Position numbers and translations under genes: made by a program. Below, one piece after another: positions 31,865 through 58,746 of a stretch of DNA of 64,000 nt; position 1 is the first letter of the stretch, and the number at the start of each line of letters is the position of its first letter. This stretch comes from Octopus sinensis (Eukaryota): NCBI RefSeq assembly GCF_006345805.1, contig NC_043002.1:18910001-18974000 (forward strand), written 5' to 3'. Under the pieces are notes generated by a model that saw only the letters and a program-made list of their open reading frames with translations, was not told the DNA's origin and made no database searches.

Positions 31865-31930
31865 GTGGCGCCTCTCGTGGCCACTTCTGTAAAAATATGT
31901 ATGATGAGTAATCTCCCTTTACATTTTAAG
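31865..31930 (-). promoter_or_regulatory. Conserved ZNF upstream module, copy A
   Basis: GTGGCGCC and, 36 bp on, ATGATGAGTAATCTCCCTT. Confidence 0.75.
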
Positions 31931-32002
31931 CAGTTTTTATCAGAATTACGGAGATGTACTTGCATAGCAAGTGACTTGATCTGAGATCGTGTGCTGGAAC
32001 GA

Positions 32003-32230
32003 AAACAATTGCAGCGCGGAAGGTGTTTATAAGCCATTTAAGAAACACACAAAACCGTTAGATTCACTTCAACATTTAAATTTAATTTGTCAAAATATTG
32101 TCAGTGAACAGGTCGCGGTCTCAAAGCGACAAAAATATTTTGACAAATTAAATTTAAATGTTGAAGTGAATCTAATGGTTTTGTGTGTTTCTTAAATGGC
32201 TTATAAACACCTTCCACGTTGCAATTGTTT
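32003..32230. repeat. 97-bp inverted repeat with 34-bp spacer (PLE-type junction)
   Basis: Arms 32003-32099 and 32134-32230, 3 mismatches. Confidence 0.92.
32098..32146 (+). ncRNA. Hammerhead fold with G3-C8 core covariation and G12A lesion
   Basis: TTGTCA-GTGAACA-G-GTCGC/GCGAC-AAAA-ATATT-T-TGACAA (first A of ATATT shared as listed at 32134-32139 palindrome AATATT). Confidence 0.6.
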
Positions 32231-32603
32231 ATGAGAATTAGTTTAGCTATTAAATTTTAAGGCTATCTACCTACTTCACCACGTTCCTTATTCCTATCCT
32301 ATCTATGTACAAATAATATTGGACCGTTATGCTGAAAACATACTGAACAAATTATTGGCAGCACCTAACAAATTTATCGTCTCTGTAATTCCACAGAGCA
32401 TGCACCAATTGTCAACACTTTGTTTCAATTGGATACCTATCCCTTTTGTGCATTAAGTGCTTTGTTATTCTGTCCTGCTCCTTGATTGTAAAAGTATACC
32501 TTTCAAAATGGGAGCTAATATAACAGTTCTTACAGGAAGATAAATTCCTCTAGCCAAATTTAAGTTACAATTACACCTAATGCTTTCTCGAAACATAGTC
32601 AAG

Positions 32604-33102
32604 CATGACTCTTGATAATCAGTATGCCATTCTAATGGTTTTCTTTATCTTCTTTGCTGTTGTGCAGCCTCTCTGGATGCGTATCATGGAATATTTTCTG
32701 AGGAGCTTCTTTCCTGCTATTATAACAATAACTCTGAGCACCTTTTCAAACTCCACCCGTCTAACACCTGTGGACATATTTACAAAGTCAGAAAACAGCA
32801 CAGCTCCCATGACTTTCGGAAACATTTTTTCACGCTGAGAGTTGCTGAAGCATGGAACAAACTGCCGGCATCAGTTGTTAGTTGTCGGAGCACTGCATCC
32901 TTCAAAACTTCCATGCTTTCTGAGATTCGCCAACACTACACCTGATTTTCTCTCCTCCATACATACACAAGCATGTATCTGACTCGTACACTGTTCACTT
33001 CCCAGACATTTGTACATTACTGCATATACTTTATATGCACTTTCTGACAAGTTGTGGTGCACCTGAGCACTGTATACAATAATTTCATTATATTATATTA
33101 TA
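32604..33102 (+). mobile_element. CR1-type LINE 3' fragment
   Basis: RKHFFTLRVAEAWNKLPASVVSCRSTASFKTSMLSEIRQHYT*, then 3' UTR and ATT-type tail. Confidence 0.85.
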
Positions 33103-33129
33103 TTTGCCTCATGTATGCACATTTGTTCA

Positions 33130-33560
33130 TTTAATACCCATTGATGCTTATCACTGTTGACATAGAAATTTCTGGTGATAGTTTTCTTGTTTTTGTTTTA
33201 ACTTTTAATATCAATGGCACCAATTTCATCCAGTATTCAGCTGAATAACTTAAATGTTGGAGTGAGTACTAGTACTTGTTTACTGTATGTAAAAAAACTT
33301 GGTATTTTTTCATCCCTTTGTAAAATACCATAGTTATGTATTCCTTGTGAGTGACATAAACGGATATATTTTCATACATCCCTAGGTACCTATAGAATTC
33401 TTCATTGAATATAGGTGAAATAGTCACTGATAGAGGTGTTGCTAAACTGAGCTGAAATTTCAAGTTTTATAATCATGTGAGAATATTTATCTTGATCAAA
33501 CTCTAATCCTGTACCTACTGAAAATACCACAACTTGACCAAGTATCTCCTCATCAATCAT
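33130..33560 (-). mobile_element. Decayed R4-like RT fragment
   Basis: VFSVGTGLEFDQDKY and EEFYRYLGMYENI resemble FSxDIGMxFGxDKC and YKYLGxxE. Confidence 0.4.
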
Positions 33561-34035
33561 AGCAACCTTGTGTTGAGAGACGATTGGAAAAAGATGGGTA
33601 AAAGTATGAAAAAGGGTCAGAACAGAAAATATTTTTTGCTGCAGAGGGGACACAGGACTAATCATATTTTTAAAACGGTGGGAGTAATGAAGTGGAGCCA
33701 GATAGTGATGAGTTGAATAGGGAGTAGAAGATAATAGCACTGAGGAGCAGAACAGCAATGAACTACAATGGAATGATGTTGGGTAGGTTGCAAAAATGGG
33801 TAATGAAGAGAAAGGCAGACATAGTGCATGAGGGTGAGCAACATATGATGGTTGAGAAGGAGAGTTGCTGATTTCGTGTGGGGAGGTTATCAATGAAACT
33901 CTTGATGAAGCTATTAAGGGGGTGAAGGGTGGATAATGAGTGAAATGTTTCTTGGTAGTAAGAAAGAGCTGCAGTAAGGGAAGCAATGAGGATATCCTGA
34001 GGGAAGAAAAATTGGAAGAAAGGGCCTAGTTGGGC

Positions 34036-34067
<32 letters not shown>

Positions 34068-34123
34068 ATGTGACTGCGTGTGTACCGTTGGCGATTTTTT
34101 TTCCTCTCTCTTCCCTTCTCCTA

Positions 34124-34160
34124 TGTTTCCAGCGAAGAGCTCCGCTCGAAACGTTACACC
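34124..34160 (+). ncRNA. Degenerate hammerhead-like motif
   Basis: CCAGCGA-A-GAGC-TCC-GCTC-GAAA-CGTT: perfect stem II and palindromic stem III, non-canonical core, weak stem I. Confidence 0.45.
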
Positions 34161-35082
34161 CTCCTTCTTCCCTTCTTTCCTGAGCGTCCAATAATACTAT
34201 ATTTGTTCCACGTCCTCACGTTGTTGTGTTTTTTTGTGCTTTATATATATGTATACATATACACAGATACACACAAACACACACACACACACGCAAAAAA
34301 AAAACATGCAGCTCAACCAGAACTCAAAGTTTTGCCAATGAGAGCATGTCTTCTTCAGACCTCATATCAGTTATTCTAATCTTTTTACAATCACATCCAT
34401 GAGATCAACCTTTGCCACTTTGCCCCATATATACTTGAGTGCCTAGCCTCTTCTGCAAGATCCACACACATATATGTATATGTACAGCCATACATATAAC
34501 ACCTTAGTAACATGAATTTCAGACACCATAAACATCATTGATACACATGAAATACTGAGAGACAGGACAGAAGTTAATCCATTATATATATATGAAAAGA
34601 ATGAACTTTAAACCCATGGTCTTTATCTCTCTGATGTGTGATCTTTTATATGCAGATGATTGTGACCTAGTGAGTCACACTGAACAAGGCTTATAGAACC
34701 TAATTAGTGTGTTTAAGCCTATAAGAGATCTATTTGGCCTCACATTAAAGATTTTGAGCTCAACAGTTAAGAATGCTGAAATATAAAGAAAATTTCATAA
34801 AAACTAAATTAATATCAATAACATTGCATGAGTTTCTCATTCCTTCTTTAGGTGTTCCTTTTGCACAAAAGCATGCATATCTCACACCTATGAGCCTATA
34901 TGGGTAAAGCATACAAGAACTAATAGAATTTTATTTTCAGTGACTAGTTTCAAGGCAATATATGTCAAGAAATCTGCAAGTCATGAGGAGGACTTGAGCT
35001 GCACTTTGAACATTCATAATCAATAAGTGGAAAATGAAGCCAATGCTGAAATGAGACATTGCTGCAGTATATGTGAACACAT

Positions 35083-35467
35083 GTAGGAGTGACTGTGTGG
35101 TAAGAAGCTTGCTTCCCAACCACATGGTTCCAGGTTCAGTCCCACTGCATGGTACCTTGGGCAAGTGTCTACTATAGCCTCAGGCTGACCCAAGCCTTGT
35201 AATTGGATTTGGTAGATGGAAACTGAAAGAGGCCCATCATATATATATATATATATGTATGTATTTGTGTCTGTGTTTGTCCCCCTACCATTGCTTGACA
35301 ACCGATGTTGGTATGTTTACATCGCTGTAACTTAGCAGTTCAGCAAAAGGGACCAATACAATAAGTAATAGATTTACAAAGAAGTTTTGGGGTCTATTTG
35401 TTCAACTAAAGGCAGTGCTCCAGCACAGCCACAGTGAAATGACTGAAACAAGAAAAGAAAAAAAAAA
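35083..35467 (+). mobile_element. tRNA-derived SINE (family 1)
   Basis: Matches the reverse complement of 29742-30154. Confidence 0.88.
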
Positions 35468-35699
35468 TCAAGAAAGTTCTTCAAATGCCTTTCAGGGCTG
35501 AAAAGTTGTTTAAGAGCTCATGCTAGCAAAGAGTAATTATAGATACAAGAGGTCAAACTCTGCAAGGAACAGATAGCTACCATATATGTATGTGTGTGTG
35601 ATGATAGATAATACTCCTCTGAATGGTATGCTAAAATTCTGCTACTAGGGAAACATCCCTTTGAACAATGCCCAAATGCATGAAGAGGTCACCCAGTGA

Positions 35700-36650
35700 T
35701 TGTCCAAGACAGTGGCACATAAAATGCACCATTTGAGCATGGTTGATGCCAGTGCCACCTGACCGGTCCCTGTGCCAGTGGAATGTAAAAAGCACCCACT
35801 ATACTCTTGGAGTGGTTGGTATTAGGAAGGCATCTAACTGTAGAAACCTTGCCAGATCAGATTGGAGCCTGGTGCAGGCTCTTGGCTTGCCAGTCCTCAG
35901 TAAAACTGTCCAACCCATGCCTAACTGTGGAAGGGGTAGACACAGGATGAGTTTATGAAGCATGACCTTCAAACATTGGGCCTCACAGAGACAATGACAG
36001 GAGACTGAGACCTTTGGAGATATGCAGTGATTAGGAAGACCTGGCAACTAAGTGAGATTACAGCCATGGCCGATGACAGTGTTGCATGTCCAGCCCATTA
36101 AAGAGTACCCCTGATACGTCAGGTGATATACTTGTGAAGACCTGTTGAATCAAGTAAAACCAAAATTGTAGCTGTGGCCAGTGCTCCCTGACTAGCTCCC
36201 ATTCTGGTGGCACATAAAATGCTTCATCTAAATGTGGTCGATGCCAGTGTCCTCTGACTGGTTCCCATGCCAGTGGCACATAAAAAGCACCATGCGAACA
36301 TGGTCGATGCCAGGCCCACCTGACTAGCACCTGTGCCAGTAGCATGTAAAAAGCACCATCCGAACATGGTCGATGCCAGGCCCACCTGACTGGCACCTGT
36401 GCCAGTGGCACGTAAAAAGCACCATCCGAACATGGTCGATGCCAGGCCCACCTGACTGGCCCCCGTGTCAGTGGCATGTAAAAAGTACCCACTACACTCT
36501 TGGGAGTGATTGGCATTAGGAAGGGCATCCAGCTGTAGAAACATTGCCAAATCAGACTGAAGCCTGGTGCAGCCGCTGGCTCTCCAGACCTGTCAAACCG
36601 TTCAACCCATGCCAGCATGGAAAATAGATGTTAAACGAGGATGGTGATTG
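35700..36650 (+). mobile_element. Two RTE-tail-like repeat copies, the second with a 66-bp minisatellite
   Basis: Shared AAAAGCACCCACTA(T/C)ACTCTTGG..AGGAAGG block at 35790 and 36481; tail CCCATGCCAGCATGGAAAA..GTTAAAC; 66-bp units start at 36216, 36282, 36348, 36414. Confidence 0.65.
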
Positions 36651-38431
36651 CAAGAACACAATTCAAGATTTCATTTAATAAAGACTCCAAGATGATTAAC
36701 TTTATTAGGATGGTGGTTCCCAAATTTATTTTGTCATGGAACCCATACTTATATTATGCTATAAACAATCCCTAATTCTAATAAGACATTAAATAAACTA
36801 ATCATTGTTTTAGAGACATAAAAAAAATACTTGTTTTGAAAATGGTAATATAAAATAATTTTCTTTTAAATTCTATCAAAAGACAACTAATCTCACAAAA
36901 CTCCTGAAATTTTTCATAAACCTTTGGGTATCTCAGAAGCTTTGAGAAATGCTGTACTAAATATCTATCTATAAACTTTCATTTTTAAGTTAAGAGTTAG
37001 AATATACTGATTTGGATGTATTCAAATATACTTTATTTGCAGCAAGCCATCACATTACTAATTAATCTGTTGTCAATGAATTTTATAATGAATTGTTTAA
37101 ATATAAGAAGGTAGCATCTAGTGTCAAATAACTTAATAAAATTCACTATGTACATTGTACATAGTGAATTTTATTAACAGAGGGCAAAGCACAAATCCAT
37201 ATAACATTCCATCAGACAGATTTTCATCAAGTGAAACTATATGTTGCATATGAAATGTGAGTCAGAGCACAAATAGTAAATGTAATATGGTAAGTTATAA
37301 CGAAGTTATACTGCATATTGGTCAAACTTATCTCCTGTAATGAGCTGTGTACACAATACAAAAGTAGCTATCAAATTCTTTAGATCTTGCTTCACTATCA
37401 AACCTTTATTTTTTACCTTTGACTTCGGCTCGGTATGGATTTATTGTACACAATGGCACCCAGGTAGATAACTCAAGAAAATTATGAATCAAAGATATCT
37501 TTTCCTCTGATACATTGTAATGTGATGCTAGATGTACCATACAGGGCGTTATAGGTATGTCTCTAAGATTTATGGTTGGAAGGGAAAATGTAGAAGCAGG
37601 TTATCAGACACATTGATATTAAAAATGAAGGATGGGAAAGTTATTTTGGGGGGATGTCTTAAGAAAATAACAAACCAGAAAAGATTATAAAGATTTATGA
37701 TAAATCGTTGGCATTTAAAACTACTTTAATAACAATGAGATACAAAATTTCAAATGTCAGTTTCTCAACAGTACCAATACACAGATATGTGTAATGAAAT
37801 GAGTACTATGGTTACAAATTTTCTTTCAGTCCATAAAGGAGAATGAAACTGTCAAGTGTCAAGCTGTATTTCCTACACATTTCACAAAATCACTGACTTT
37901 CTTGTTAAGTGATTGATTTACCATAGTTAACACACTATTTCACTCTCTTCTCCATCAAATACCTGTGTATCAAAGTACTGCATTAAATCTGTTTTTGCCC
38001 AATACATCCTATTATCATCCTTGTGTACTGCTATCCATCACTCCCTCTCCTCCAGGTAACTTGTAAATGACGATTAAACTCTCTTACAATCATGCATCTC
38101 TGCAACTATCCATCACTAACCCTCTCTCTTACTATCTGCCATTAGTGCCTTTCTTCTGTTACCCTAGGGAATCAAAGAGGCCTCAAATTAAAGTTTGCAA
38201 AAACTCAATTTTTGTTAGAAAGAAGACATGAACCAGCTACCAGATTATAACCCCCCATTATTACTGTCCCCCTTTTATTATCATTATTAGCACTGTCTTT
38301 CTACCATTCCCTCTTTTAACACCTTTTATTCAAATTATTCTGTTTGTTCTATTATACTTTTAGTTCTTTTGTCCTCTCACCCTTGTTCATGCTCTATCTG
38401 TTCTTTCCAGCCTCTTAGTCATGCTGCCTTG

Positions 38432-38985
38432 AATAATAATAATAATAATGAAATTACTGTGTATAGTGTTCAGGTGCACTACAACTTATCAAAGGTGCAT
38501 GTATAGTACATAGAATTATGTACAAATGTCAGGAAAGTGAACAGTGCAAGAGTCATGATATACATGTCTGCATACATATGGAGGGAGGATATCAGGTGTA
38601 GTGCTGGCGAATTTCAGCAAGCAATGTCTTGGCAACTAACAACTGATGCAGGTAGTTTGTTCCATGCTTCAGCAATTCTGAGTGTGAAAAAATATTTAGA
38701 AAGTCATGGGAGCTGTGCTGTTTTCTGACTTTGGAGGCATGCCTACATGTGATAGACACATGGAATTCAAAAAGGTGCTCAAGGTTGTTGTTGTTGGCAT
38801 GATGGTTAATAATTTTGTGGGTGTTTACCAAGTCAGTTGCCAGACATCAGAGCTTCAAAGTATGCATGCCCAGGGAAACAAGGTGTTCAGAGTATGGTAG
38901 ATGCCTGATGGAGAGTATTCAGTTGGTTCCAGGATGTCAATGTTCTGAGCAAGATAGAGGTTCCAGACTGGTGATGCAAATTCTA
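38432..38985 (-). mobile_element. CR1-type LINE 3' fragment
   Basis: (AAT)n tail and body homologous to 32604-33102. Confidence 0.85.
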
Positions 38986-39405
38986 AGTGTGGCCACACCA
39001 TAGCCATATAGATAGCTGGAGGGTGGTAGAGCAGTAAAAACTATTAAGCTCTGCAAGATATAAAGTAGCCTTACCAGAGCTGGTGTCATGATATAATGTG
39101 TCTACTGTACCACTATACATTGTATACATACTATTGTTAGGAAGGGCATCTAGCCATCGAAACCATGCCAAATTGAATATGAGTGAGATATATACCTTCA
39201 ACATACATAGGAAGGAACTGAATAAAACCCATTGGTCATGACAGTGTCTTTCCTATAAAATTTAGTTGAAATGAGAACTATATAGAGATGTTTTAAAACT
39301 TTTAGGAAAATATTTCCTAGGTATATGACATAGGTGCAAATTTGTGAATTGGCTTCTGTATTTTAAATAAATACATCCAATGAAATGTTTTCCCAAATTT
39401 CAGTG

Positions 39406-40272
39406 TTAATGCTCTTCTCCAAAATGGACTTTATTTTTATGAGTTCTTAAGCGACTATAAACATAGAATGTTTTCCCACAAATATCACAATGATATGGTT
39501 TTTCACCAGTATGACTATATTCATGAACTGAAAGGTCCCGGTTTCTAGAGAATGCTTTCCCACAAGTTTCACACTGGTATGGCCTTTCACCAGTATGAAC
39601 ACGTTTATGGCTGGCTAAGTTACTGTAATCTGAAAATGCTGTCCCACAGATTTCACAAATATAAGGTTTTAATCCAGTGTGGAGAATTTGATGTCTTTTT
39701 AAGCTAAATCCTCTGGAAAATGCTTTTCCACAAACATCACAAGTGTATGGTTTTTCTCCTGTGTGTACTCGTTTATGTTTTTCGAAGCATGCCAATTTAG
39801 TAAATGTGTGCCCACAAACTTCACAATGGTAGGGCCTTTCTCCTGTATGAAGGTATATATGACATTTTAATGATGATTGTCTAGCAAAAGGTTTTTCACA
39901 AACATTGCACTTATAAGGCTTTTCTCCAATATGAACGATACGTACATGATTTGATAAAGTTCCTTTTTGAGAAAATGATTTTCCACAAATTTCACAGTCG
40001 TAAGGTCTTTGTGTTGCATGAATTGCACGTTTATGAGATGATAAGTTGGAATTTTTAGAAAATGATTTCCCCCAAATTTCACAGTGCTTACGTTTGTCTC
40101 CTACATGGAAAGCGCATTTATGTGATGATAATTCAGTACTCAGAGTAAATGCTTCTCCACAATCCTCACATCGGTAAGGTCTTTCTCTTGAGTGAATGAG
40201 CTTATGAGCATTCAATGCTTGACTGGTAGAAAGAAACTTATTACAAAATTCACAGTAGTATATTTCCTCCAT
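39406..40272 (-). CDS. C2H2 zinc-finger protein B, 10 finger repeats (finger 3 C->W), 288 aa
   Basis: ORF 39406-40296; first ATG (MEEIYY) at 40272; acceptor CATTTCAG|G at 40676-40678. Confidence 0.92.
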   Translation of the reverse strand: MEEIYYCEFCNKFLSTSQALNAHKLIHSRERPYRCEDCGEAFTLSTELSSHKCAFHVGDKRKHCEIWGKSFSKNSNLSSHKRAIHATQRPYDCEICGKSFSQKGTLSNHVRIVHIGEKPYKCNVCEKPFARQSSLKCHIYLHTGERPYHCEVCGHTFTKLACFEKHKRVHTGEKPYTCDVCGKAFSRGFSLKRHQILHTGLKPYICEICGTAFSDYSNLASHKRVHTGERPYQCETCGKAFSRNRDLSVHEYSHTGEKPYHCDICGKTFYVYSRLRTHKNKVHFGEEH

Positions 40273-40963
40273 CTTAACACATTCACATGCAGACAAATTA
40301 CTCTTTTGAAAAAAATGTTTTCACATAAACTTCACACCAGAAAAGTGTTTCAGGTATTTAAATCATCTTAAATATACCAATTTTTCAAATTACGAATACA
40401 ATAAAAATACAAATGTTCCAACAAGTTTCACACTAAACTATATCTTCTCTATCTAAATCTCTTGGTGTTTACTTCAGATCATTCACCCGTAATATGTTGT
40501 ATCAGTTTAAATTGCAAATTTGGTCACAGTTATCTTACTATTCAGCTCAGGATGTTTAGCATATTTTTAATCTAAAAAAAAAAAAAGTACTGATAAATGT
40601 TACAGCGTTTATTTCAACTAAGTCTGTTGAATCACAATCCTTCTGGTAGAAAATTTTCCAACTGAATGGGATAACCTGAAATGAAAGAAAACAAATATTA
40701 ATTTGTGATCAACAAGAGCCCAAACAGTGATAATTTTACTTGTGTGACAGCTGAATTGTGTGTGTGTGTAAACTTTAAATATGTAAATAGACTTAGTAAT
40801 TCTCTTCATAGACACACACAAGATTATCCTAGTGTGTTTCAAAGTCTGTTGAAATGCACAGAAGTATGCTCCTTGCCTTTCTGCCCACAAAGAAAGCTTG
40901 GAGCAAATGACTACTTAAATCCAAACCAAACCTACACTGTGGGCAAAAAAGAATGATGACGTA

Positions 40964-44323: not shown

Positions 44324-44430
44324 CTTACCAGAGCACTGTCTTCTTTCTAATTCAGCACTGTATATAGTTAAACACACAAACCACTACACCTTAGTAAAAT
44401 GTATGTGTTAGACATTTGTATGATTTAACA
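44324..44430 (-). other. Non-coding exon 1 of ZNF B (approximate)
   Basis: CCTTACCAGAGCACTGTCTT block identical to ZNF A; donor AAG|GTGAAT at 44323. Confidence 0.65.
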
Positions 44431-44499
44431 TAAGAGGCTAATGGTTAATTTATTTCGCATCTACATAATCGCGTGTATATATGTATGTACATTGCAGAG

Positions 44500-44564
44500 G
44501 TGGCGCCGCTTTCGTTAGCTTCTGGGACAATATAAATGAAGAGTAACTTCCCTTCATTTAAGGG
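44500..44564 (-). promoter_or_regulatory. Conserved ZNF upstream module, copy B
   Basis: GTGGCGCC and, 36 bp on, ATGAAGAGTAACTTCCCTTCATTTAAGGG. Confidence 0.75.
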
Positions 44565-44581
44565 ACATGTATTTCTAATTT

Positions 44582-44785: not shown

Positions 44786-45108
44786 AAATGTTTTTATATT
44801 AGAATTGTTGCACTCTTAATAAACATGACACTTTAGATTCTCGGTCTACTTTACGGTATTTTCCCCCTTATGTAGTAAGTACTTTCAGAATAACTTTTTG
44901 TAACACCTACTAAATTCGCTATCTCCTCAAAGACAATCAACCACCAAATTCAGTACCATTCTTAAAGCACAGGCACATGGTAATTTCCTATTTGATATTC
45001 GTAAAATCATAACGAACCAAAAAGTTCATTTCAATAAAATATTTGTTATGAGTGGTACACACTGGAAACAGTGAGTAAAAAGTGAGGGAGATAGTTAGAC
45101 TTATTTTA

Positions 45109-45386
45109 TAATAATAATAAAATTATTGTATACAGTGCTCAGGTGCACCACAACTTGTCAGAAAGTGCATATAAAGTACATGCAGTAATGTAGAAATGTC
45201 TGGAAAGCGAACAATGTATGAGTCAGATACATGCTTGTGTGTGTATGGAGGGGAGAAAATCAAGTGTAGTATTGGCGAATCTCAGAAAGCATGGAAGTTT
45301 TGAAGGATGCAGTACTCCGACAACTAACAACTGATGCCGGCAGTTTGTACCATGCTTCAGCAACTCTCAGCGTGAAAAAGAGTTTC
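45109..45386 (-). mobile_element. CR1-type LINE 3' fragment
   Basis: FFTLRVAEAWYKLPASVVSCRSTASFK and (AAT)n tail. Confidence 0.85.
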
Positions 45387-47958: not shown

Positions 47959-48681
47959 TCAGTGAATCTTCTTATGTCTTCTTAATGAAATATTTCGAGA
48001 AAATGCTTTCCCACAAATATCACATTTGTATGGTTTTTCACCAGTGTGACTATATATATGAACAGAAAGGTCACAGTTTCTAGAAAATTCTTTTCCACAA
48101 AAGTCACACTTATAAGGCTTTTCTTCAGTGTGACTGTATATGTGAACAGAAAGGTCATGGTTTCTAGAAAACTCTTTATCACAAATGTCACATTTATACG
48201 GTTTTTCACCAGTATGAGTAAGTTTATGGCGTTTTAAAGAATTACTTCTAATAAATGCTCTGTCACAAACGTCACATTTGAATGGTTTTTCACCAGTATG
48301 ACTATATTTATGAAATGAAAGTTCGTTGTTTCTAAGAAAAGCTTTCCCACAAATATCACATTTATATTGTTTTTCACCAGTATGAATATGACTATGAACA
48401 TTTAGTGAACTACTCGTTGCAAATGCTCTTCCACATATATCACAACCGTATGATTTTTCACCGGTATGACTATAGTTATGAACTGTAAGATGACAGTTTC
48501 TAGAAAACGCTTTTCCACAGATATAACATTTGTATGGTTTCTCACCATGAGTTTCTTTATGACGTTTTAAAGAATCATTGCTACTGAATGCTTCTCCACA
48601 AATTCTACAGCGGTATGGTGTTTTGTCAATAATTGTATCACTGTCAGGATGAATTTCACAATAGATATATGTTTCCTCCAT
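47959..48681 (-). CDS. C2H2 zinc-finger protein C, 8 fingers, 240 aa
   Basis: ORF 47959-48732; first ATG (MEETYIY) at 48681; acceptor with long pyrimidine tract at 49150-49152. Confidence 0.9.
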   Translation of the reverse strand: MEETYIYCEIHPDSDTIIDKTPYRCRICGEAFSSNDSLKRHKETHGEKPYKCYICGKAFSRNCHLTVHNYSHTGEKSYGCDICGRAFATSSSLNVHSHIHTGEKQYKCDICGKAFLRNNELSFHKYSHTGEKPFKCDVCDRAFIRSNSLKRHKLTHTGEKPYKCDICDKEFSRNHDLSVHIYSHTEEKPYKCDFCGKEFSRNCDLSVHIYSHTGEKPYKCDICGKAFSRNISLRRHKKIH

Positions 48682-49784
48682 CACATTTCTATGTAAATAA
48701 AATATTCTTTTGAAAAACTCTTTTCCCTTCACATTGTAAAATTTATCTGGTATTTGTTATCTTACAATTATTTTCAAAATAATATTGAAACTTCTGTGTA
48801 TCTACTGTAGGTGAATGTAAAATAAAGCGTGAAAAGTAAAATTATGAGGTGGAAACCGAAACTGTACCAGCAGTCAAGTATTCTATTTGGCCATCAATGA
48901 ATTGTGTATGACTTGACTGGCTTTGAATTGGTAGAGTCATCAGTACGTTGGAGTAGCAGTACAGTTCATTACGCTGAATTCAAATTCTGTCATGGTTCGT
49001 TTTACTTTTCATCTTTCTGCTGGTTGATTAAATGATGCTCCAGTAAAGCAATCCTACATGTTTTTTTTATTTCTGTTAATCCCTCTCTTTCTATGCTTTT
49101 ACATTTGAACAGCTTTCAAATTATGTCTTGAAGATCAGAAATTCAGAATCTGAAAAAAAAAAAAGAAAAAAAAAAGATGAAAAAATTTTCCATTTTAAAT
49201 TGGGATCTAATTAGGGTTTAGAGATTTAGGACTACAGTATTTTTGGCAACTTTTGACTGTAGAATATCACTTTCACTTTCGTCAATCAACATGGCATATT
49301 CTGCTAACAGTTTGAATAGATCACACCAAAATTATTCATAGTTACATGTACTTCATTCATTAATACAAGCATGCATATATAATAATCCGAATTAATTTCA
49401 GATTTAAAATTCTTTCTTCTTTTTAATTGCAATTTTTTCTCTTTAATTAAAAAGAAACCTATTTTTTGTTCAAAACATAATCAGAACGCCATATAACATT
49501 CATAATGAAAAGAAAAGTTTAAAATAAGTTCAAATTCCATTTAATATTTTCCCTATATATATTAGGAATTATGATTATATATATGCAGGAAATTAAAGCA
49601 GAAGACAAAACTTGCAAACTGGAAGTCATTTTTTTTTAATTATTGTAATTTTAACAGTCTCGTCTGTTGACATTTCAGATATTGACAATATTCTGTTGCC
49701 AAGTAAACCAATTAATAAATTGCTAACAGTGAGATATAACCGTAACCTAAACAACCACTAATTACAGTATTACAGAGAAATTAC

Positions 49785-49880
49785 CTTACTTCTCTCTTTT
49801 TTTCAGCTGTACAGAGAAACTTTCAAGTTGATAAACACACATCGTTTCACCAGTTTTGCGATATATACTTAGCATATTTA
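49785..49880 (-). other. Non-coding exon 1 of ZNF C (approximate)
   Basis: AAG|GTAATT donor at 49784. Confidence 0.55.
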
Positions 49881-49965
49881 ATTCAGCTTCCCCATGAAAT
49901 GCGAATTTATATCGACAACATGTCTACGCATCCATTTGTGCCGCAGTGTAAGAATCATGGATAAG

Positions 49966-50025
49966 GTGGCGCCCCTAGTAGTCACATCTGAGAAAATATC
50001 AATGAAGAGTGACTTCCCTTTGTGT
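49966..50025 (-). promoter_or_regulatory. Conserved ZNF upstream module, copy C
   Basis: GTGGCGCCCCTAGTAG and, 36 bp on, ATGAAGAGTGACTTCCCTT. Confidence 0.75.
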
Positions 50026-50243: not shown

Positions 50244-50563
50244 ATAATAGTAATAATGAAATTATTGTATACAGTGCTCAGGTGCACCACAACTTGTCAA
50301 AAGTGCGTATAAAGTATATGCAGTACTGTACAAATGTCTGGGAAGCGAACAGTGTATGAGTCAGATACATGCTTGCGTGTGTATGGAGGAGAGAAAATCA
50401 GGTGTAGTGTTGGCAAATCTCAGAAAGCATGGAAGTTTTGAAGGATACAGTGCTCCGACAACTAACAACTGATGCTGGCAGTTTGTTCCATACTTCAGCA
50501 ACTCTTAGCGTGAAAAACTGTTTCCGAACGTCATGGGAGTTGTGCTGTTTTCTGACTTTGTAA
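50244..50563 (-). mobile_element. CR1-type LINE 3' fragment
   Basis: Homologous to 45109-45386. Confidence 0.85.
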
Positions 50564-50912
50564 ACAACATAAAAAAATCACACGCTTAAAGCTTCAACAC
50601 TTAACAGCACTCACGGCTAACACAAACGAAGAATTAAAAGAAAAAGAGATTACACGGATTTTCCTCAGTTTGGCCTGGCTCTATAACAAAATATAAAGAA
50701 CATGATCACTGGGCACACATAGACCACACTATACCCATACAATGAAACAACCTAATATAAAAGGAAGACCACCTTTACATGAGAGAAGCTTAGTTTGTTC
50801 CTACAACAAACTACAACTAGGTCCTTGCAATTATATGTAAAAAATTAAACATAAAGGAACATCTGATCACCTCAGAACACTATCATACTATTTAGGAATA
50901 TTTCCATTGATA

Positions 50913-51489: not shown

Positions 51490-51892
51490 GATATATATGT
51501 ATATAAAAGTGAGGTTGTGTGGTGTCTGTCTCCTATGATTTAGATTCCTAACTACTCCCACATTTTGCAGTGCAGTTTAACCAAAAGCGGGTATCTTATA
51601 GTCGTGATTCATATCGAGCCCTTCTGGGTATTAGCGCGCATCTACGATGAGTCTACGATTTTAAAAAAATTTACCATAATTTTTTTCCCATTTTTAATGC
51701 ATTTTTTTGCTATTATATAAGGGAAGTAACTCTCTAAAAATTTATTATTAAATCTCAGAACGTAAAAAGCTACAGTAACCCCCCCCCCTTGTAGTTAGCC
51801 ATATTGAGATGGCTATTATACTTTACATCTCTAAAAATGCTTATATAGTTATTTCCCTTACAAACCCGAGCAACGCCGGGCGATACTGCTAG
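51490..51892 (+). mobile_element. Non-autonomous Helitron
   Basis: 3' hairpin CCCG-agcaacgc-CGGG at 51865-51880 and CTAG|T, like 17311-17338; 5' end blurred by (TA)n. Confidence 0.75.
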
Positions 51893-52469
51893 TACATATA
51901 TATATATAAAAGTAGCATGTAACAGTTAATCTCTCAGTCATTTATGCACAGTATTCTAATGTAGATCTTGCTTAGGCTTTTAAGAAAGTTATAAAATTCA
52001 TATTGCAGTATTGATTCAATTTAATGTTCATTCAACTTGCTAGAAAGAGCATCCAAATTTTCTTCAAATCACACCCAACATAATTTTTAAACATATACAT
52101 TCAATATAATTCTAGATACAGAGTGTGTGGAAAATAACAAGCTGCTTCTAAGAAAGATACTTAGAGAAATATCTTGCAAAAAGTAATAGAAAGCAATGTC
52201 TATAATTGTGCACTCATATGAACCCTTTTGACCCCTTTCAGAAAATGTGTCACAGTCAGATATGGCTACTTTAAGATATTTCTATAAACCTGATTTTGAA
52301 CAATACTTACTTCGATATCCCAGATGGGGTCCTGTCAGCTACGCTTTCAACATAACTCTTTTGCTCACCAGTCTATTATTAAACACATACATTTATTAAC
52401 CCCTCCAGGGTTAATAAAATAAAGTACCAATTTTCATGGCCTTGTATCTAAATTAGAAACATTTTTTTT

Positions 52470-52777
52470 GTGTGTGTGTCCTTTTCAAGCCTAGCCAGGC
52501 TCATGGGCCCGGTTTTCCGGTTTCTGTGGTGTATATGTTCCCCCCAGCTGGACGGGACACCAGTTCATCGCAGAGTTGCTCAAGAAACAGAAAGACGGAG
52601 TGAGAGAAAGTTGGGGCGAAAGAGTACAACAGGAGTTGCCACCACCCCCTGCCAGAGCCTCATGGAGCTTTAAGTGTTTTCGTTCAATAAACACACAACG
52701 CTCAGTCTAGGAATTGAAACCTCAATCCTCCGACTGCAAGTCCGCCACCCTAACCACTGGGCCAATGCGCCTCCACA
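52470..52777 (-). mobile_element. tRNA-derived SINE (family 2 head, different tail)
   Basis: Minus strand TGGAGGCGCATTGGCCCAGTGGTTAGGG head matches 27665; 3' half differs. Confidence 0.8.
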
Positions 52778-54712
52778 GAAACAATTTTACTTTGCAGTTA
52801 ATAGCAGTAATGTAGATTAATTACGGTCAATTCAACAGGGATTGAAAACATGGTATTTAGACTGTATCTAATGCCAACCTTGTAGCTGAAAGAAATGCAA
52901 GAAATCCTTATAAATCCTCAACAAAAGCTTGAAAGGAAATTAAGCCAGAAAAGTTTATAGAACACATCAACAAAAATTCATTGGTACAGCAGACATGTTA
53001 AACAGAAGTGTAAATACTAATGATAGGACTCAAAAGAACAAACCTAGACAGGGTTTTATCTGAACTACAGTATAACTTGCATGGGTCTGGAATGGATAAT
53101 TAGCAACCACATGTAATCCTTGGATGTGGATGCATTACAAAAAATTGTGAAAATTATAGCATTCATATCATAGTAGCATGTAATATGATTAAATTCTATG
53201 GGACTCGACAAATGGTCACACAGACAACAGTGTCTAACATGGCTATTAGTTCAATGTAGAATTAATTTGGTTGATCCACTGAATAAGGCTTCTGCAGGAG
53301 AAGACTTGATCAGTTTTACTTCAATGAAAGATTTATCATAAGGGTCAGCCGTTGTTTAGTATTAATAATGAAACACTATTCTAAAATGAAGGCTCAGCTT
53401 TTTGAATTAAAGTTAACTATGAATTAGATATGTGGACACCAAAAGACATTTAGAAGACTGTGAGGCCTAGCATTTATAAATAATTAAGGATTGAATTGTA
53501 AGGTGTTTATTATTGTTGCAAGTATGTTTCCATGAGAATGAACAAAACTATGTTGTGATGTTATCATTTAAAGTTATTTTTGAAATCCTTGTTCATAGAA
53601 GTAGAGCAGATACTGTATGATGTATCTAGGATTTAAGTGGATGACAGATGTGTAAAAATATGGTTATCAAGGAGTGAATGTCAGTATTGTTGAAGGTTTG
53701 AACTGTGAATTGTTTTAAAATAACTTACTCAAAACCTGTAGAACAATACCCATGATCTTTCTCAGGGTCATCATGACTAGTTAGAGAACAACTTCCTCCA
53801 AGTGGACTCTAGGCCCAAGTGCTTGCAAAAGAATGTACTCTGCTGCAGGTGCACAAAGGCCAGGAGCAATAAATTCATTATCATCCAAGGGTAGTTATAG
53901 TCATTTTACTGGACTTTCACAGTTTCTCCCTCAAATTTCATTGACAATGTTTCAGTCAATCCAAGGTTATGATAGGAGACACTAACCCAGAGTGCAATGC
54001 AGTGAGACTGAAACTGACACCTCATAGTTGTCAAGCAAACTTCTTGAGTGAGTCAAAACCAGATGGGAATGATACAGCTATTTCTGCAGCTCACTATGAG
54101 TGATTAGACACAATACTGTGTTGTAACTGTGTTTGTATTTCTGTTCTGTTCAGTCAATTAAGAACACAGTAGAGTTTATTGGATATGGGGCAAGGAGAGG
54201 CCTGTCAATATGTGTTGCAACGGATCATTTTAACAGGAAACATGTTGCAAAACTACTTTGTCAATTTAGATATGATCAAAGACAAGGGCAGTAAGACAGC
54301 TTTTACTTAAGTAAAATTATCTTTTAATTGAAATAGAGTAAAAGAAACAGGTCTGTTATACAATATATTTTAAAGTAAAAATACTAACAATGAGAAAGTA
54401 AGTTCAAATATGTTAGGTGTATTACAGAAGTGGTTTCTCAGATATACTGATCTGATAAAATGAAAAATTGTTGAGTTCAGCAGAGGGTAAAATAAAAGAA
54501 AAAAACAAACTATATTTTACATAGTAAGTACATAAAGTTTATTTTCATAAAAATAAAAGTTTAATATATAAATATTCCACCTCAATTATACTGGAATAAG
54601 TTTCCATTAAGTAAAAATTCCTCTACAAATGACTCGGATATTCAATTGTTTTCTCAGTGTGAATCCAATGTCTTGTTAATGAAATATTATTAAATATGTT
54701 ATTCTACAAGTG

Positions 54713-56179
54713 TCATGTTTGTAGGTTTCCACCAATATGACTGTATTTATGAACTGAAAGGTCACAGTTTCTAGAAAATGTTCTGTCACAAATATCACAT
54801 TTGTATGGTTTTTCTCCAGTATGTGAAAATTTATGACGTTTTAAAGAATCATTTCTTGAAAATGATTTCCCACAAATGTCACAATTGTATGGCTTTTCAC
54901 CGGTATGGCTATATTTATGAACTGAAAGGTCATAATTTCTGGGAAATGCTTTTCCACAAATCTCGCATTTGTATGGTTTCTCTTCAGAATGAGTATATTT
55001 ATGAACTTTTAACGAACTATTACTAGCAAATACTTCTCCACAAATGCTACAATGATATGGATTTTCACCAGTATGCAAATATTTATGAACTGAAAGATCA
55101 CAATTTCTAGAAAAGGCTTTCCCACAAATATCACATTTATATGGTTTTTCACCAGTGTGAGTGTATCTATGACGTTTTAAAGAATCACTTCTACAAAATC
55201 CTTTTCTACAAATACTACAATGATATGGTTTTTCATTAGTATGGCTATATTTATGAACTGAAAGATCATGGTTTCTTGGAAATGCTTTTTCGCAAATATC
55301 ACATTTGTATGGTTTTTCACCCGTATGAGTATATGTGTGAACTTTTAATGAACTCTTTCTAGAAAATGCCTCTCCACAAATATTACAATGATGCGGTTTT
55401 TTACCAGTATGTGCATATTTATGAACTGAAAGGTCTTGATTTCTGGGAAATGCTTTTCCACAAATATCACATTTATATGGTTTTTCACCAGTATGAGTGT
55501 ATTTGTGAACTTTTAATGAACTATTTCTAGAAAATGCTTTCCCACAGATATTACAGCAAAATGGCTTTTCATCAGTATGAATACATTTGTGCACCGAAAG
55601 GTCACAGTTCCTAGAAAATTTTTTCCCACAAATTTCACAGCGATGTCGTTTCTCACCAGTATGAATACGTTTATGTCCGGCCAAGTTACTGTAAAATGAA
55701 AATGCCAACCCACAAATTTCACAAATATAAGGTTTATTTCCTGTATGGAGAATCTGATGGCTTGATAAACCAAATGCTGTTGTAAATGATTTCCCACAAA
55801 TTTCACAGTGGTAAGGCTTTTCTCCCAGATGAACAGTACGTATATGACTCGAGAGATGACTGTTTTTGGAAAAGGATTTTCCACATATTTCACAGTGCTT
55901 GCGTTTGTTTTTCACATGAACATCCTGCTTATGAGATGATAACTCACTACTTTGAGCAAATGCTTCCCCACAATCTTCACATGGGTAAGGTCTTTCTCCT
56001 GAATGAATGAGTTTATGAGCATTTAATTCTTCACCAGTAGAAAGAACTTTCCTACAAAACTCACAATAGTAATACGTTCCCTTGATCTTAACACATTCAT
56101 CTGCAGGCAGAAGATTCTTTTGAGAAACTGTTTTCACATAAACTTCACATTTGTATAGTTTCTCTGGTGTTTGAACCAT
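54713..56179 (-). CDS. C2H2 zinc-finger protein D, 16 fingers, 488 aa
   Basis: ATG at 56179; acceptor CATTTCAG|G at 56501-56503; TGEKPY-linked array. Confidence 0.93.
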
Positions 56180-56759
56180 TTTGTGAAATCTGACACACTT
56201 TCAGAAAATTACAGTGTATTATCGTTGAAATATGAACATATTTACAACAGAAAACAAAAAACAAATAAAAGACAGTCTTCAATGACGTAATTGTAATATT
56301 TTGCAGATAGCTTAATTGCAATATGTTGTGTTCTTTTAAGGTGTAATCGTGGTTACTCTTATTTTAATAATTTGATTGGTAAACAACATTGTTATATTGT
56401 TGTCATTTACACTGATAAATATCACATTCTGATTATTTTCACCAACATTGTAAAATTACAAAGTCCTCTGGTGCAAAACTGTCCAACATTAAAGTATAAC
56501 CTGAAATGGAAGAAAACAAATATTAGTTCCTGCTCAACAAAAAGCTCTAACAGTGATAATTTACTTGTACAAGTGATGTTCTTCTGGAAGAAGACCAATG
56601 TAAACACATCACAGGAGGTAGGACTACACAACTGAGATGTTATGTGATCAAGCAACACAAGAGTATGATGTAATACACTCCAGTCTAAGTTATACTACTA
56701 GGGAAATTTATAATATGATGATGATACATTGTTTCATAGGGCTTAAAAGCTGAACTCAT

Positions 56760-57700
56760 AATTTTCAGAAAAATGAATATTTTTGAATGAAATTTTCAAC
56801 AAATATACTTCAGTTAGTGCAGATTCCGGTTATGTCAGAATTTGTTGGAAAATTTTTTTCTGACGTTGGGGGAAAAGAGTTTCAGAAAATTCATACGAGT
56901 TGGCTTTGTTTCCTCATAACTTTCAGAAAAATGAGTATTTTTTTAATGAAATTTCTACAAAGCTTTTCAGATGGTGTAGATTAGGACTATATTTGAATAT
57001 AATGAGCAAAAAATAAACAGACACATATCCCAATTTTTTCGAAATTTCAAGTTTCATTTCGTAGGTATATGTGAGGTATCAAAATGGTATGCACATTTTA
57101 TTCAACTGATATATATATATCATAATAAACACTGTCTGGAAGGGATCTGTAGAAAATATCATAAAAAGAATAACCATTTTGTTAAGTTTCCAGATGAATC
57201 ATTCAGCCGATAAGCTATTATTTCAAAGTTAGGCATATCTACACAATTACACCCACCACCACTGTCAGAGTTTGTTTTCTCATAACTTTCACAAAATGGG
57301 TATTTTTAATGAAACTATTTACAAATTTTCAACTTTTCAGATGATGTAGATTATGATTATATCGGAATTCAATGTGGCAAAAAAAAAAAAAAAAAAGAAA
57401 TGGTGGGCGTGCACACCTACAAACTGACAGTTTACAATTATAGCTACAAAAGGAAATTTGAAATTCTGAAAAAATTGTAATGTGTGTCAGTATGTATGTG
57501 CTGCACCCACCTTATATTTTTGTTTTGTCTTTGTTTTGTTTTTTTTTTTTGTTTTTTTCTCCATAACGAACTCCCATACAATCAGAATCTACAGTGTTTG
57601 AAAGGAAATTGTACAAAATTTCGTTTAAACGAATTTATTTTCCTGAAAGTTATGAAGAAACAAAATCGGGGTGGGGTACACACACTTGTGTAGGTATGCA
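56760..57700. repeat. Foldback-like element built from ~100-bp modules
   Basis: Module TTTGTTTCCTCATAACTTTC..GTAGATT..ATCGGAATT occurs in both orientations. Confidence 0.5.
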
Positions 57701-58510
57701 CATCCATATTACTTCAATGTGATATTATCTGTTGAGATTTACTTCTCTCAAGTACATTTAGTTGGTAAACTAATAACATTAACAACAACGTTTAATTACA
57801 CCATCAAAGCACCAATTAAATCATTTAATATCATTTTAATCAGTTGATATCATTTTAGATCGCAATAACAAAAAATGAAAGTAAAATCGAAATAAAAGTG
57901 AAACCAGGAAGTTCAACAATGGATCAAGAAGGAAATGAAAGCAATCGAAAGTAGGAAATTGAATATTATTACGTAGCATGAAAAATGCATATATTTAAAT
58001 AAATATATTGATTTCAAATAGACGAATACGATTCGTGAACACTTTCATAATAACTGAACTCCGCCCTCCATAAGTGTTTCGTGCTGGTAGAATGTGAACC
58101 ATCCCCTCTTCGGCACAATGTTTTCTGATAACTATCTGGAAAATGCATATTTTTAAATATTTTCCAGAGATGCATTTTAAGTGGTATAGATTCGGGTTAT
58201 ACCAGAATTTGTTGTAAAAAAGGTTTTTCGAGCGGGTGGACAGGAGTTTCGGATATTTTATACCCTTCGATTTGTTTCCTCATAACTTTCTGAAAACTAG
58301 GCGCTCCTTCGAAATTGGTCTACTGTGTCGGTACGAGGAGACGGCATCATCCACCCTCTTTGTCAGCCTAGCCTCTTTATATCATGAAAGAAGGTTGTGT
58401 GGGTGAATGACGTCGTGTACCAATAACGAAGGGTTCCGTCCCAAAATATCACTAACAGTAAAATAGCGACTGTAATCAAACGAAACTAGTGACAATATGA
58501 CAGTAATTAC

Positions 58511-58620
58511 CTTATCAGAACAACGTCTTCTTTCTCTTCATTCAACACTGTAAAAAGTAAAACAAACAAATCAATATATTCATCACAAGTTGAATTAAGA
58601 CATTTAGGATATTTCATCCA
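58511..58620 (-). other. Non-coding exon 1 of ZNF D (approximate)
   Basis: AAG|GTAATT donor at 58510; TTCATTCAAC.CTGTA block shared with ZNF A. Confidence 0.6.
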
Positions 58621-58680
58621 ACCCACAAATTCGTGTGCCTGTATACAACATGTGCATGCATGAGCAATGATAAATATAAA

Positions 58681-58746
58681 GTGGCGCCTCTAGTGGTTAC
58701 ACTTAGGAAAATATGAATGAAGAGTGACTTCCCTTCATTTTAAGGG
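58681..58746 (-). promoter_or_regulatory. Conserved ZNF upstream module, copy D
   Basis: GTGGCGCCTCTAGTGG and, 36 bp on, ATGAAGAGTGACTTCCCTTCATTTTAAGGG. Confidence 0.75.

What the first reader, a model, noticed from the sequence alone, without database searches (positions are those of the whole stretch)
31865..58746. A ~55-65 bp upstream module with invariant 36-bp spacing in front of all four ZNF genes
Seen: GTGGCGCC starts at 31865, 44500, 49966 and 58681. ATGA(A/T)GAGT(G/A)A..TCCCTT starts exactly 36 bp later each time (31901, 44536, 50002, 58717). Each copy lies 171-195 bp upstream of the exon-1 donor while the surrounding DNA has diverged. In B and D the second box is a dyad (AATGAAG-N10-CTTCATT). 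The gene-sense first box CCACTAGAGGCGCC resembles the CTCF core but is one base shorter. Inference: a shared two-factor promoter cassette co-regulating the expanded C2H2 family. I found no other copy in the window.
Basis: partly seen in the sequence, partly recalled or inferred. Interest (0 to 1): 0.75.

Follow-up and report, generated by a model that had tools for sequence, protein, structure and literature searches.

The report
Shared promoter block of ZNF paralogues
A 55-base stretch just upstream of the first exon of each of four neighbouring zinc-finger genes has stayed nearly unchanged and gap-free while the DNA around it decayed to random, so it is very probably their inherited common promoter element; this is an ordinary kind of feature, and its binding proteins are unknown.

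Summary
GTGGCGCC and ATGAWGAGTRA occur at the stated coordinates, exactly 36 bp apart, once upstream of each of the only four C2H2 zinc-finger arrays in the window. All four genes are on the minus strand.

The unit is a 55-bp block with no indels. 33 of its 55 columns are invariant, grouped in three blocks in gene sense: AAGGGA..T.ACTC.TCAT, ATATT.T and AG.GGCGCCAC. Its mean pairwise identity is 0.80. The 100-bp and 45-bp flanks sit at shuffle level (0.53-0.58). Synonymous sites of the same paralogues differ at 42-53%.

The block is not a transposon, a coding exon or a structured RNA.

- The CTCF-like part is the least conserved part and matches CTCF no better than background.
- The dyad exists only in B and D.
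- There are three invariant blocks, not two. The geometry also fits a TATA-like element 31 bp upstream of an initiator-like CCAC.
- Eighteen ZNF arrays in seven Octopus loci lack the module, so it marks this subfamily, not "the expanded family".

The transcription start and the bound factors remain unknown.

Verdict: a real, lineage-restricted conserved promoter element of modest novelty.

The parts
31865..31919 (-). Module copy A (55 bp): Box 1 at 31865-31875, ATATT.T block at 31892-31898, Box 2 at 31901-31919
44500..44554 (-). Module copy B: Box 1 at 44500-44510, ATATT.T block at 44527-44533, Box 2 at 44536-44554
49966..50020 (-). Module copy C: Box 1 at 49966-49976, ATATT.T block at 49993-49999, Box 2 at 50002-50020. 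Apart from the short donor motif, this is the only non-coding stretch of gene C still alignable to A, B and D that is not a transposon
58681..58735 (-). Module copy D: Box 1 at 58681-58691, ATATT.T block at 58708-58714, Box 2 at 58717-58735
31671..31864 (-). Gene A: stretch between Box 1 and the shared donor AAG|GTAAT (G at 31670). It contains the non-coding exon 1, whose 5' end is unknown. A conserved T.AAAT element lies at 31778-31785
44324..44499 (-). Gene B: stretch between Box 1 and the donor AAG|GTGAA. T.AAAT element at 44421-44428
49785..49965 (-). Gene C: stretch between Box 1 and the donor (G at 49784). T.AAAT element at 49874-49881
58511..58680 (-). Gene D: stretch between Box 1 and the donor (G at 58510). 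T.AAAT element at 58609-58616
24814..26661 (-). Gene A large C2H2 exon (21 fingers); probable ATG at 26610
39406..40296 (-). Gene B large C2H2 exon (9 fingers); probable ATG at 40272
47959..48732 (-). Gene C large C2H2 exon (8 fingers); probable ATG at 48681
54713..56179 (-). Gene D large C2H2 exon (16 fingers); ATG at 56179

Best explanation
The 55-bp block is the conserved promoter element of a small tandem subfamily of C2H2 zinc-finger genes in an octopod genome. It was inherited from the ancestral gene at each duplication and has been held by purifying selection ever since.

In gene sense it has three protein-contact blocks at fixed distances:
- a 19-bp upstream box, AAGGGA(A/G)(G/A)T(T/C)ACTC(T/A)TCAT;
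- a TATA-like ATATT(T/G)T;
- a GC box, AG.GGCGCCAC.

Bound factors would assemble stereospecifically, which is why no insertion or deletion has been tolerated. They would drive transcription of a non-coding first exon that starts somewhere between Box 1 and about 120 bp downstream of it.

Shown: position, copy number, one-to-one association with the genes, the sharp conservation island, and the absence of indels. Inferred: protein binding, promoter activity, and co-regulation of the four genes.
For: - There are four copies, one upstream of each of the only four ZNF arrays, in gene orientation, 171-195 bp from a shared exon-1 donor.
- Mean pairwise identity is 0.80 in the module. It is 0.58 in the upstream 100 bp and 0.56 in the 45 bp downstream, against a shuffle baseline of 0.53-0.55. 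The exon-1 part is 0.65 and the intron 0.58.
- 33 of 55 columns are invariant against 53 of 257 outside (p = 2e-8). There are no gap columns against 48 outside (p = 5e-5).
- The paralogues are old. In the non-repetitive N-terminal coding part pS is 0.42-0.53, dS 0.6-0.9 and pN 0.18-0.26. The module, at 0.20-0.25 divergence for the same pairs, changes at about the rate of amino-acid-changing sites.
- In gene C the module is the only alignable upstream DNA apart from the short donor motif (TAAGGTAAT) and a young transposon.
- Distances from Box 1 to the next conserved element (65-85 bp) and to the donor (170-194 bp) vary. Only the spacing inside the module is fixed.
- In the spacer, copy D aligns better to A and C with paired, length-compensating indels. 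This hints at selection on length.
Against: - No transcription start, expression or chromatin data could be reached, so promoter activity is inferred from position and constraint only.
- The four copies are related by at most three duplications, so the sample is small and not independent.
- No copy was found outside the window. It is absent from seven Octopus ZNF loci (about 163 kb, 18 arrays) and from JGI metagenome contigs. Cross-species conservation is therefore untested.
- No block matches a known factor's consensus convincingly.
- Genes B and C look partly degenerate yet keep the module.
Confidence: 0.7

Rival explanations
1. Core-promoter reading, a more specific version of the best explanation. 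The middle block is a TATA-like element and Box 1 carries the initiator, so transcription starts at the A of CCAC. The invariant spacing is the TBP/TFIID TATA-to-initiator distance. Box 2, at about -54 to -36, is the single activator site.
For: - The T of (C)ATATTT at module position 23 is 31 nt upstream of the A at position 54 in all four copies.
- The sequence there is CCAC followed by TTT in D, which fits YYANWYY. A, B and C fit with one mismatch.
- This reading explains the third invariant block, which a two-factor model leaves unexplained.
- Exon 1 would be 170-194 nt long.
- The TATA and Inr consensus sequences and the -31/-30 rule are taken from established knowledge, not from a tool.
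Against: - ATATT(T/G)T is a poor match to TATAWAAR, and such strings are common in 35% G+C DNA.
- The 45 bp just downstream of Box 1 are unconserved.
- A second element conserved in all four copies, T.AAAT, lies 65-85 bp further down and could be the real TATA box.
- Invariance of GGCGCC at -6 to -1 is not typical of initiators.
Confidence: 0.3
2. One reading: a two-factor cassette in which Box 1 is a CTCF-type (or E2F-type) site and Box 2 a dyad bound by a dimer, co-regulating the expanded C2H2 family.
For: - Copy D reads CCACTAGAGGCGCC, which is the CTCF core minus one G.
- CTCF and CCCTC-like motifs exist in cephalopods (PMC9023564, PMC13652810).
- GGCGCCA is the centre of E2F-type sites (from knowledge, not tested).
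- B and D carry AATGAAG-N10-CTTCATT.
Against: - The CCACTAG half varies: A has CCACGAG, B ACGAAAG and C CTACTAG. The invariant part is GGCGCCAC.
- All four copies are one base short of the CTCF core register.
- Only D comes within 3 mismatches of CCASYAGRKGGCRS. So do 45 other sites in the window against about 35 expected by chance.
- The left arm of the dyad lies outside the invariant block and is missing in C and imperfect in A.
- The T-run of an E2F site is absent.
- The module is absent from 18 other Octopus ZNF arrays.
Confidence: 0.1
3. No function: the block is a leftover of duplication kept similar by chance, by a local mutation cold spot, or by short gene-conversion tracts between the paralogues.
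For: There are only four related copies. Tandem paralogues do undergo gene conversion. No functional data exist.
Against: - Both flanks drop to shuffle-level identity within a few bases.
- Synonymous sites of the same genes differ at 42-53%.
- Conversion tracts are usually hundreds of bases long, and would homogenise whole stretches rather than leave three invariant blocks separated by a variable spacer.
- The CpG in GGCGCC survives in all four copies.
Confidence: 0.07
4. The block is part of a mobile element, or of a transcribed functional RNA or small coding exon, rather than a DNA-level promoter element.
For: Young SINE-like copies lie 230-1500 bp upstream of every module. One gene-sense frame is open across all four copies.
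Against: - The block has exactly four copies with about 60-bp boundaries. It has no terminal repeats and no similarity to the repeat families shared with the Octopus loci.
- The nearby SINE-like copies are 92-95% identical, far younger, and sit at different distances and orientations.
- Variable positions fall 7/8/7 over the three codon phases.
- The consensus fold is -3 kcal/mol with no compensatory pair.
Confidence: 0.04

Closest known systems
Shared promoter architecture of clustered znf genes on zebrafish chromosome 4 (Hadzhiev et al., bioRxiv 10.1101/2021.08.09.455629; also Wells et al., PMC10547256)
   Same: A lineage-specific, tandemly expanded C2H2 family whose members share a recognisable promoter type. 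In zebrafish this is a sharp start site with a TATA box, and it goes with co-ordinated expression.
   Different: In zebrafish the shared feature is a core-promoter class defined by CAGE, not a 55-bp conserved block. Here no start-site or expression data exist and the sequences are unrelated.
Conserved sequence element (CSE) in front of each variable exon of the vertebrate clustered protocadherins
   Same: A short conserved element at a roughly fixed distance upstream of each tandem paralogous first exon, surrounded by diverged DNA. It is bound by CTCF and used for promoter choice (from established knowledge; review PMC7811963 listed, not read).
   Different: The units here are separate genes, not alternative first exons of one transcription unit. 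The CTCF core is not matched. Promoter choice and enhancer looping are untested.
TATA-box plus initiator core promoter
   Same: An AT-rich element whose first T lies 31 nt upstream of an A in a pyrimidine-rich CCAC context, with the distance invariant in all copies.
   Different: The AT-rich element is not a consensus TATA box. The G+C-rich hexamer just upstream of the putative +1 is unusually conserved. The start site is unmapped.
Canonical CTCF site
   Same: Copy D resembles the core over its first ten bases.
   Different: It is one base short in all copies. The resembling half is the variable half. The match is no better than background.

Membership tests
Canonical CTCF binding site | Match to the core consensus CCASYAGRKGGCRS(Y) (consensus taken from memory) | tested here: not met
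   Only copy D comes within 3 mismatches. 46 sites in the window do so against about 35 expected by chance. Copies A, B and C do not.
Canonical CTCF binding site | Conservation concentrated on the information-rich core positions (CC..AG..GGC in register) | tested here: not met
   The invariant part is AG.GGCGCCAC, with one base too few between AG and GGC. The CCAC(T/C)AG half varies among copies.
Canonical CTCF binding site | Occupancy by CTCF | not testable with these tools
   No ChIP or CUT&RUN data were accessible.
TATA + initiator core promoter | TATA-like element with its 5' T at -31/-30 from an A(+1) in YYANWYY | tested here: inconclusive
   The distance T23 to A54 is 31 nt in all four copies. 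The Inr match is perfect in D and has one mismatch in A, B and C. However, ATATT(T/G)T departs from TATAWAAR.
TATA + initiator core promoter | Transcription actually starts at the initiator | not testable with these tools
   No transcript 5' ends were available. The exact proteins of the window are not in the collection.
E2F site | TTTSGCGC(S) with T-run and GCGC core (from memory) | tested here: inconclusive
   The GGCGCC core is invariant, but the flanking T/A run is absent: (A/G)GTGGCGCC(T/G/C).
Promoter-proximal cis-regulatory module conserved among tandem paralogues | One copy per gene, in gene orientation, just upstream of the first exon | tested here: met
   Four of four genes carry it, 171-195 bp from the exon-1 donor.
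Promoter-proximal cis-regulatory module conserved among tandem paralogues | Conservation above the neutral level of the same duplicates | tested here: met
   Identity is 0.80 against 0.53-0.58 in the flanks and the shuffle baseline. pS is 0.42-0.53 in the coding region. Fisher p = 2e-8.
Promoter-proximal cis-regulatory module conserved among tandem paralogues | Drives transcription or binds factors | not testable with these tools
   This needs reporter, footprint or pull-down experiments.
Transposable-element fragment | Further copies away from the genes, terminal repeats or target-site duplications, similarity to known repeat families | tested here: not met
   No further full copy exists in the window. 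The block does not overlap the repeat families shared with the Octopus loci.
Structured RNA or coding exon | Covarying base pairs, or codon periodicity of substitutions | tested here: not met
   There are no compensatory pairs and the consensus fold is -3.1 kcal/mol. Variable sites fall 7/8/7 by codon phase. Rfam gives no match in the window.

The most novel reading that the evidence does not exclude
The module is a lineage-specific promoter 'address' for one octopod ZNF subfamily. It would be read by a dedicated multi-finger protein. This protein could be encoded in such a cluster, giving auto- or cross-regulation, or it could be a CTCF-like factor that uses a core one base shorter than the canonical one. 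Either would impose co-ordinated or protocadherin-like one-of-many expression on the paralogues. The 19-bp Box 2 and the rigid 55-bp length fit a single long poly-zinc-finger footprint as well as they fit separate factors.
Probability: 0.08. Interest if true: 0.65.

Novelty: new member of a known kind. Interest (0 to 1): 0.3.

Why it matters
Cephalopods have one of the largest C2H2 zinc-finger expansions among animals, and how these hundreds of young genes are switched on is essentially unstudied. This finding offers a sharply delimited, indel-free 55-bp element with three invariant blocks. That makes it a ready-made handle for reporter constructs, spacing mutants and DNA-affinity purification of the factors that control at least one subfamily. 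In itself, a conserved promoter element shared by tandem paralogues is expected biology. The value is practical, not conceptual, unless the element proves widespread or is read by a cluster-encoded factor.

Tried and rejected
1. Zebrafish chromosome 4 origin (my first guess). Rejected: the LINE reverse transcriptase's best named hits are cephalopods (Argonauta hians 68%, Acanthosepion 48%), and the window shares repeat families at 80-89% with Octopus loci.
2. Finding orthologues or paralogues of the four genes.
   - Two protein searches were swamped by generic zinc-finger proteins.
   - No retrieved protein carries the N-terminal signature of this subfamily.
   - The exact proteins are not in the collection.
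3. Looking for the module elsewhere.
   - It is absent from seven Octopus vulgaris, O. bimaculoides and O. sinensis ZNF loci.
   - There are 0 hits for Box 2 in JGI metagenome contigs.
4. The fifth hits of each box (60854 and 59539) are chance, with no module context.
5. A ZNF143/Staf or STAT site in the spacer (TTCCCAGAA in the majority consensus). Rejected: that stretch is the least conserved and is intact only in B.
6. Coding exon, structured RNA or Rfam family. Rejected.
7. Transposon origin. Rejected.
8. An ATG in exon 1 (MKKK...) as the start codon. Rejected: it is absent in B and is out of frame or stopped in D. Exons 1 and 2 appear to be non-coding.
9. A search for comparable promoter blocks in Octopus ZNF clusters was uninformative, because those paralogues are too young.
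Full report
**1. The observation**

GTGGCGCC occurs on the + strand at 31865, 44500, 49966 and 58681. A fifth copy lies on the other strand at 60854. Chance expectation is 0.21 per window. ATGAWGAGTRA occurs at 31901, 44536, 50002 and 58717, 36 bp later each time. A fifth copy lies at 59539 on the other strand, against 0.33 expected. The two extra hits have no module context.

Several independent checks give the same four copies:
- The full 19-bp second box, allowing 3 mismatches, is found four times against 0.04 expected.
- A repeat search returns the same four 60-nt copies as one family, D12.
- A position-weight matrix of the 55-bp unit scores the four copies at 76-82 bits. The next best site in the window scores 5.9, and shuffles reach at most 1.4.

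The coordinates, the 36-bp offset and the non-randomness are confirmed.

**2. The setting**

The window holds exactly four C2H2 zinc-finger arrays, all on the minus strand:
- A: 24814-26661 (21 fingers)
- B: 39406-40296 (9 fingers)
- C: 47959-48732 (8 fingers)
- D: 54713-56179 (16 fingers)

Each array has one module 1.2-5.2 kb upstream of it (from the coordinates), in gene orientation.

In D the first GT of GGTAAGGT is mutated, so the donor common to all four is AAG|GTAAT.

A conserved acceptor, TTTCAG|GTTATAC, marks a second small exon. Neither exon 1 nor exon 2 has a conserved ATG or reading frame. The probable start codons lie in the large exon: MEE... in A, B and C, and MVQ... in D.

The organism is probably an octopod:
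- The best named hits of a LINE reverse transcriptase at 2155-3720 are Argonauta hians (68%) and Acanthosepion (48%).
- The window shares repeat families at 80-89% identity with loci of Octopus bimaculoides and O. vulgaris.
- The exact species was not identified. The window's proteins are not in the protein collection.

**3. Anatomy of the module (gene sense)**

```
A AAGGGAGATTACTCATCATACATATTTTTACAGAAGTGGCCACGAGAGGCGCCAC
B AAGGGAAGTTACTCTTCATTTATATTGTCCCAGAAGCTAACGAAAGCGGCGCCAC
C AAGGGAAGTCACTCTTCATTGATATTTTCTCAGATGTGACTACTAGGGGCGCCAC
D AAGGGAAGTCACTCTTCATTCATATTTTCCTAAGTGTAACCACTAGAGGCGCCAC
```

The unit is 55 bp with no indel, and 33 columns are invariant. The invariant columns form three blocks, not two:
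- Box 2, AAGGGA..T.ACTC.TCAT (positions 1-19)
- ATATT.T (positions 22-28)
- Box 1, AG.GGCGCCAC (positions 45-55)

The roughly 16-bp stretch between the second and third blocks is the variable part. Within it, copy D aligns better to A and C if a pair of length-compensating indels is allowed. This is a weak hint that length itself is under selection.

**4. Is it more conserved than its neighbours?**

Mean pairwise identity by segment, with the shuffle baseline for equal-length segments in brackets:

| Segment | Identity | Shuffle baseline |
|---|---|---|
| Module | 0.80 | 0.53 |
| 100 bp upstream | 0.58 | 0.55 |
| 100 bp beyond that | 0.53 | 0.53 |
| 45 bp immediately downstream | 0.56 | 0.53 |
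| Following 145 bp (exon 1) | 0.65 | 0.57 |
| First 100 bp of intron | 0.58 | 0.58 |

In a 312-column alignment, 33 of 55 module columns are invariant against 53 of 257 outside (Fisher p = 2e-8). The module has 0 gap columns against 48 outside (p = 5e-5).

The duplicates are old. In the non-repetitive N-terminal coding part of A, B and D, pS is 0.42-0.53, dS 0.6-0.9 and pN 0.18-0.26. The module differs at 20-25% for the same pairs, so it changes at about the rate of amino-acid-changing sites.

blastn between whole gene units finds the module in every pair. Exon 1 is found only among A, B and D. Gene C shares nothing alignable upstream except the module, the short donor motif and a young transposon.

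The distances from Box 1 to the next conserved element (T.AAAT, 65-85 bp) and to the donor (170-194 bp) vary. The fixed spacing is therefore a property of the module alone. The refutation criterion is not met: the block is a sharp island of constraint.

**5. What it is not**

- Not a mobile element. There are four copies only, with boundaries of about 60 bp. There is no overlap with the repeat families shared with the Octopus loci. The SINE-like copies found 230-1500 bp upstream of each module are 92-95% identical. They are far younger than the genes and sit at different distances and orientations.
- Not coding. Variable sites fall 7/8/7 over the three codon phases.
- Not a structured RNA. The consensus fold is -3.1 kcal/mol with no compensatory pair, and Rfam gives no match.
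- Probably not gene conversion. Conversion would not be expected to leave three invariant blocks around a variable spacer, with flanks at random level.

**6. How it probably works**

Position (just upstream of a non-coding first exon, in gene orientation), one-to-one association with the genes, and constraint together make a promoter element the best reading (confidence about 0.7). The transcription start is unknown, and three placements are compatible with the sequence.

(a) The start lies in Box 1. The T at position 23 of (C)ATATTT is 31 nt upstream of the A at position 54 in CCAC. The context fits the initiator consensus YYANWYY perfectly in D and with one mismatch in A, B and C. This is the classical TATA-to-initiator distance. 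It would explain both the third invariant block and the rigid spacing. The consensus sequences are from established knowledge; the distances are.

(b) The start lies 40-55 bp after Box 1, where the A/B/D similarity resumes. It would follow variable TATA-like strings.

(c) The start lies about 30 bp after the T.AAAT element, which is conserved in all four copies. The module would then sit at about -115 to -170.

I give (a) about 0.3.

In every case Box 2 is an upstream factor site. At 19 bp with 16 invariant positions it is long for a single monomeric factor. It could be a dimer site or a multi-finger footprint.

**7.

*CTCF.* CTCF and CCCTC-like motifs are reported in cephalopods (PMC9023564, PMC13652810). 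Here, however:
- The CTCF-like half (CCACTAG) is the variable half.
- All four copies are one base short between AG and GGC.
- Only D comes within three mismatches of CCASYAGRKGGCRS. So do 45 other sites in the window, against about 35 expected by chance.

*E2F.* The invariant GGCGCC is the centre of E2F-type sites, but the flanking T-run is missing.

*The dyad.* AATGAAG-N10-CTTCATT is real in B and D. Its left arm lies outside the invariant block and is lost in C and imperfect in A.

*'The expanded family'.* Seven ZNF loci from O. vulgaris, O. bimaculoides and O. sinensis were examined (about 163 kb, 18 arrays of at least three fingers). They contain no GGCGCCAC at all and no matrix score above background. 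These are distant paralogues in other species. The result shows only that the module is not a general octopus ZNF promoter.

**8. Comparison with what is known, and novelty**

The closest analogues are these:
- The shared promoter class of clustered znf genes on zebrafish chromosome 4.
- The conserved sequence element in front of each clustered-protocadherin variable exon.
- An ordinary TATA-plus-initiator core promoter.

The finding is a new example of a known kind of feature: a promoter element inherited and conserved among tandem paralogues. I found no description of it in the searched literature.

Interest is modest at 0.3. It would rise if the element proves to mark a large clade of cephalopod ZNF genes, or to be read by a cluster-encoded or CTCF-like factor.

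Noticed in passing
window 51719-51733 (+): An isolated exact 15-mer AAGGGAAGTAACTCT, matching the left three-quarters of Box 2. It is on the opposite strand, between genes C and D, with no Box 1 and no ZNF exon downstream. Chance expectation for this pattern is about 0.01. It may be a relic of a lost or inverted promoter copy. It is not inside a recognisable repeat.
   Followed up: partly
window 38439-38792, 45108-45386, 50247-50564, 60239-60473 (direct) and 32724-33100 (inverted): Copies of one SINE-like repeat, 84-95% identical to each other and 84-86% identical to copies in the O. vulgaris locus L001. One lies 230-1500 bp upstream of each of the four modules, at different distances and orientations. 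This is probably just a very abundant young repeat, but the one-per-promoter pattern is curious.
   Followed up: partly
window 32003-32099 and 32134-32230: A 97-nt inverted repeat, 97% complementary, with arms 34 nt apart. It starts 84 bp upstream of module A (I5). It is probably a MITE-like hairpin insertion.
   Followed up: no
window 1258-4217 (-): A G+C-rich (about 54%) non-LTR retrotransposon with RT and zf-RVT domains, in a genome region of 35% G+C. It is 72% identical in protein to an unnamed NCBI contig (GCA_024449705.1) and 68% to Argonauta hians.
   Followed up: partly
window 39406-40296 (gene B) and 47959-48732 (gene C): Gene B has a Trp in place of a zinc-binding Cys in its third finger (CEIWGKSF). 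Gene C lacks the conserved N-terminal fingers shared by A, B and D. Both may be degenerating, yet both keep the module intact.
   Followed up: no
window 58511-58520 (gene D exon 1 end): The first GT of the GGTAAGGT donor seen in A, B and C reads GATAAGGT in D. The donor common to all four genes is therefore the second one, AAG|GTAAT.
   Followed up: partly
window 35704-36506: A 66-bp tandem repeat array (four to five units, 67-84% identical) lies inside an apparent 186-aa ORF at 36058-36618. Related sequences are present in Octopus loci L001-L003.
   Followed up: no
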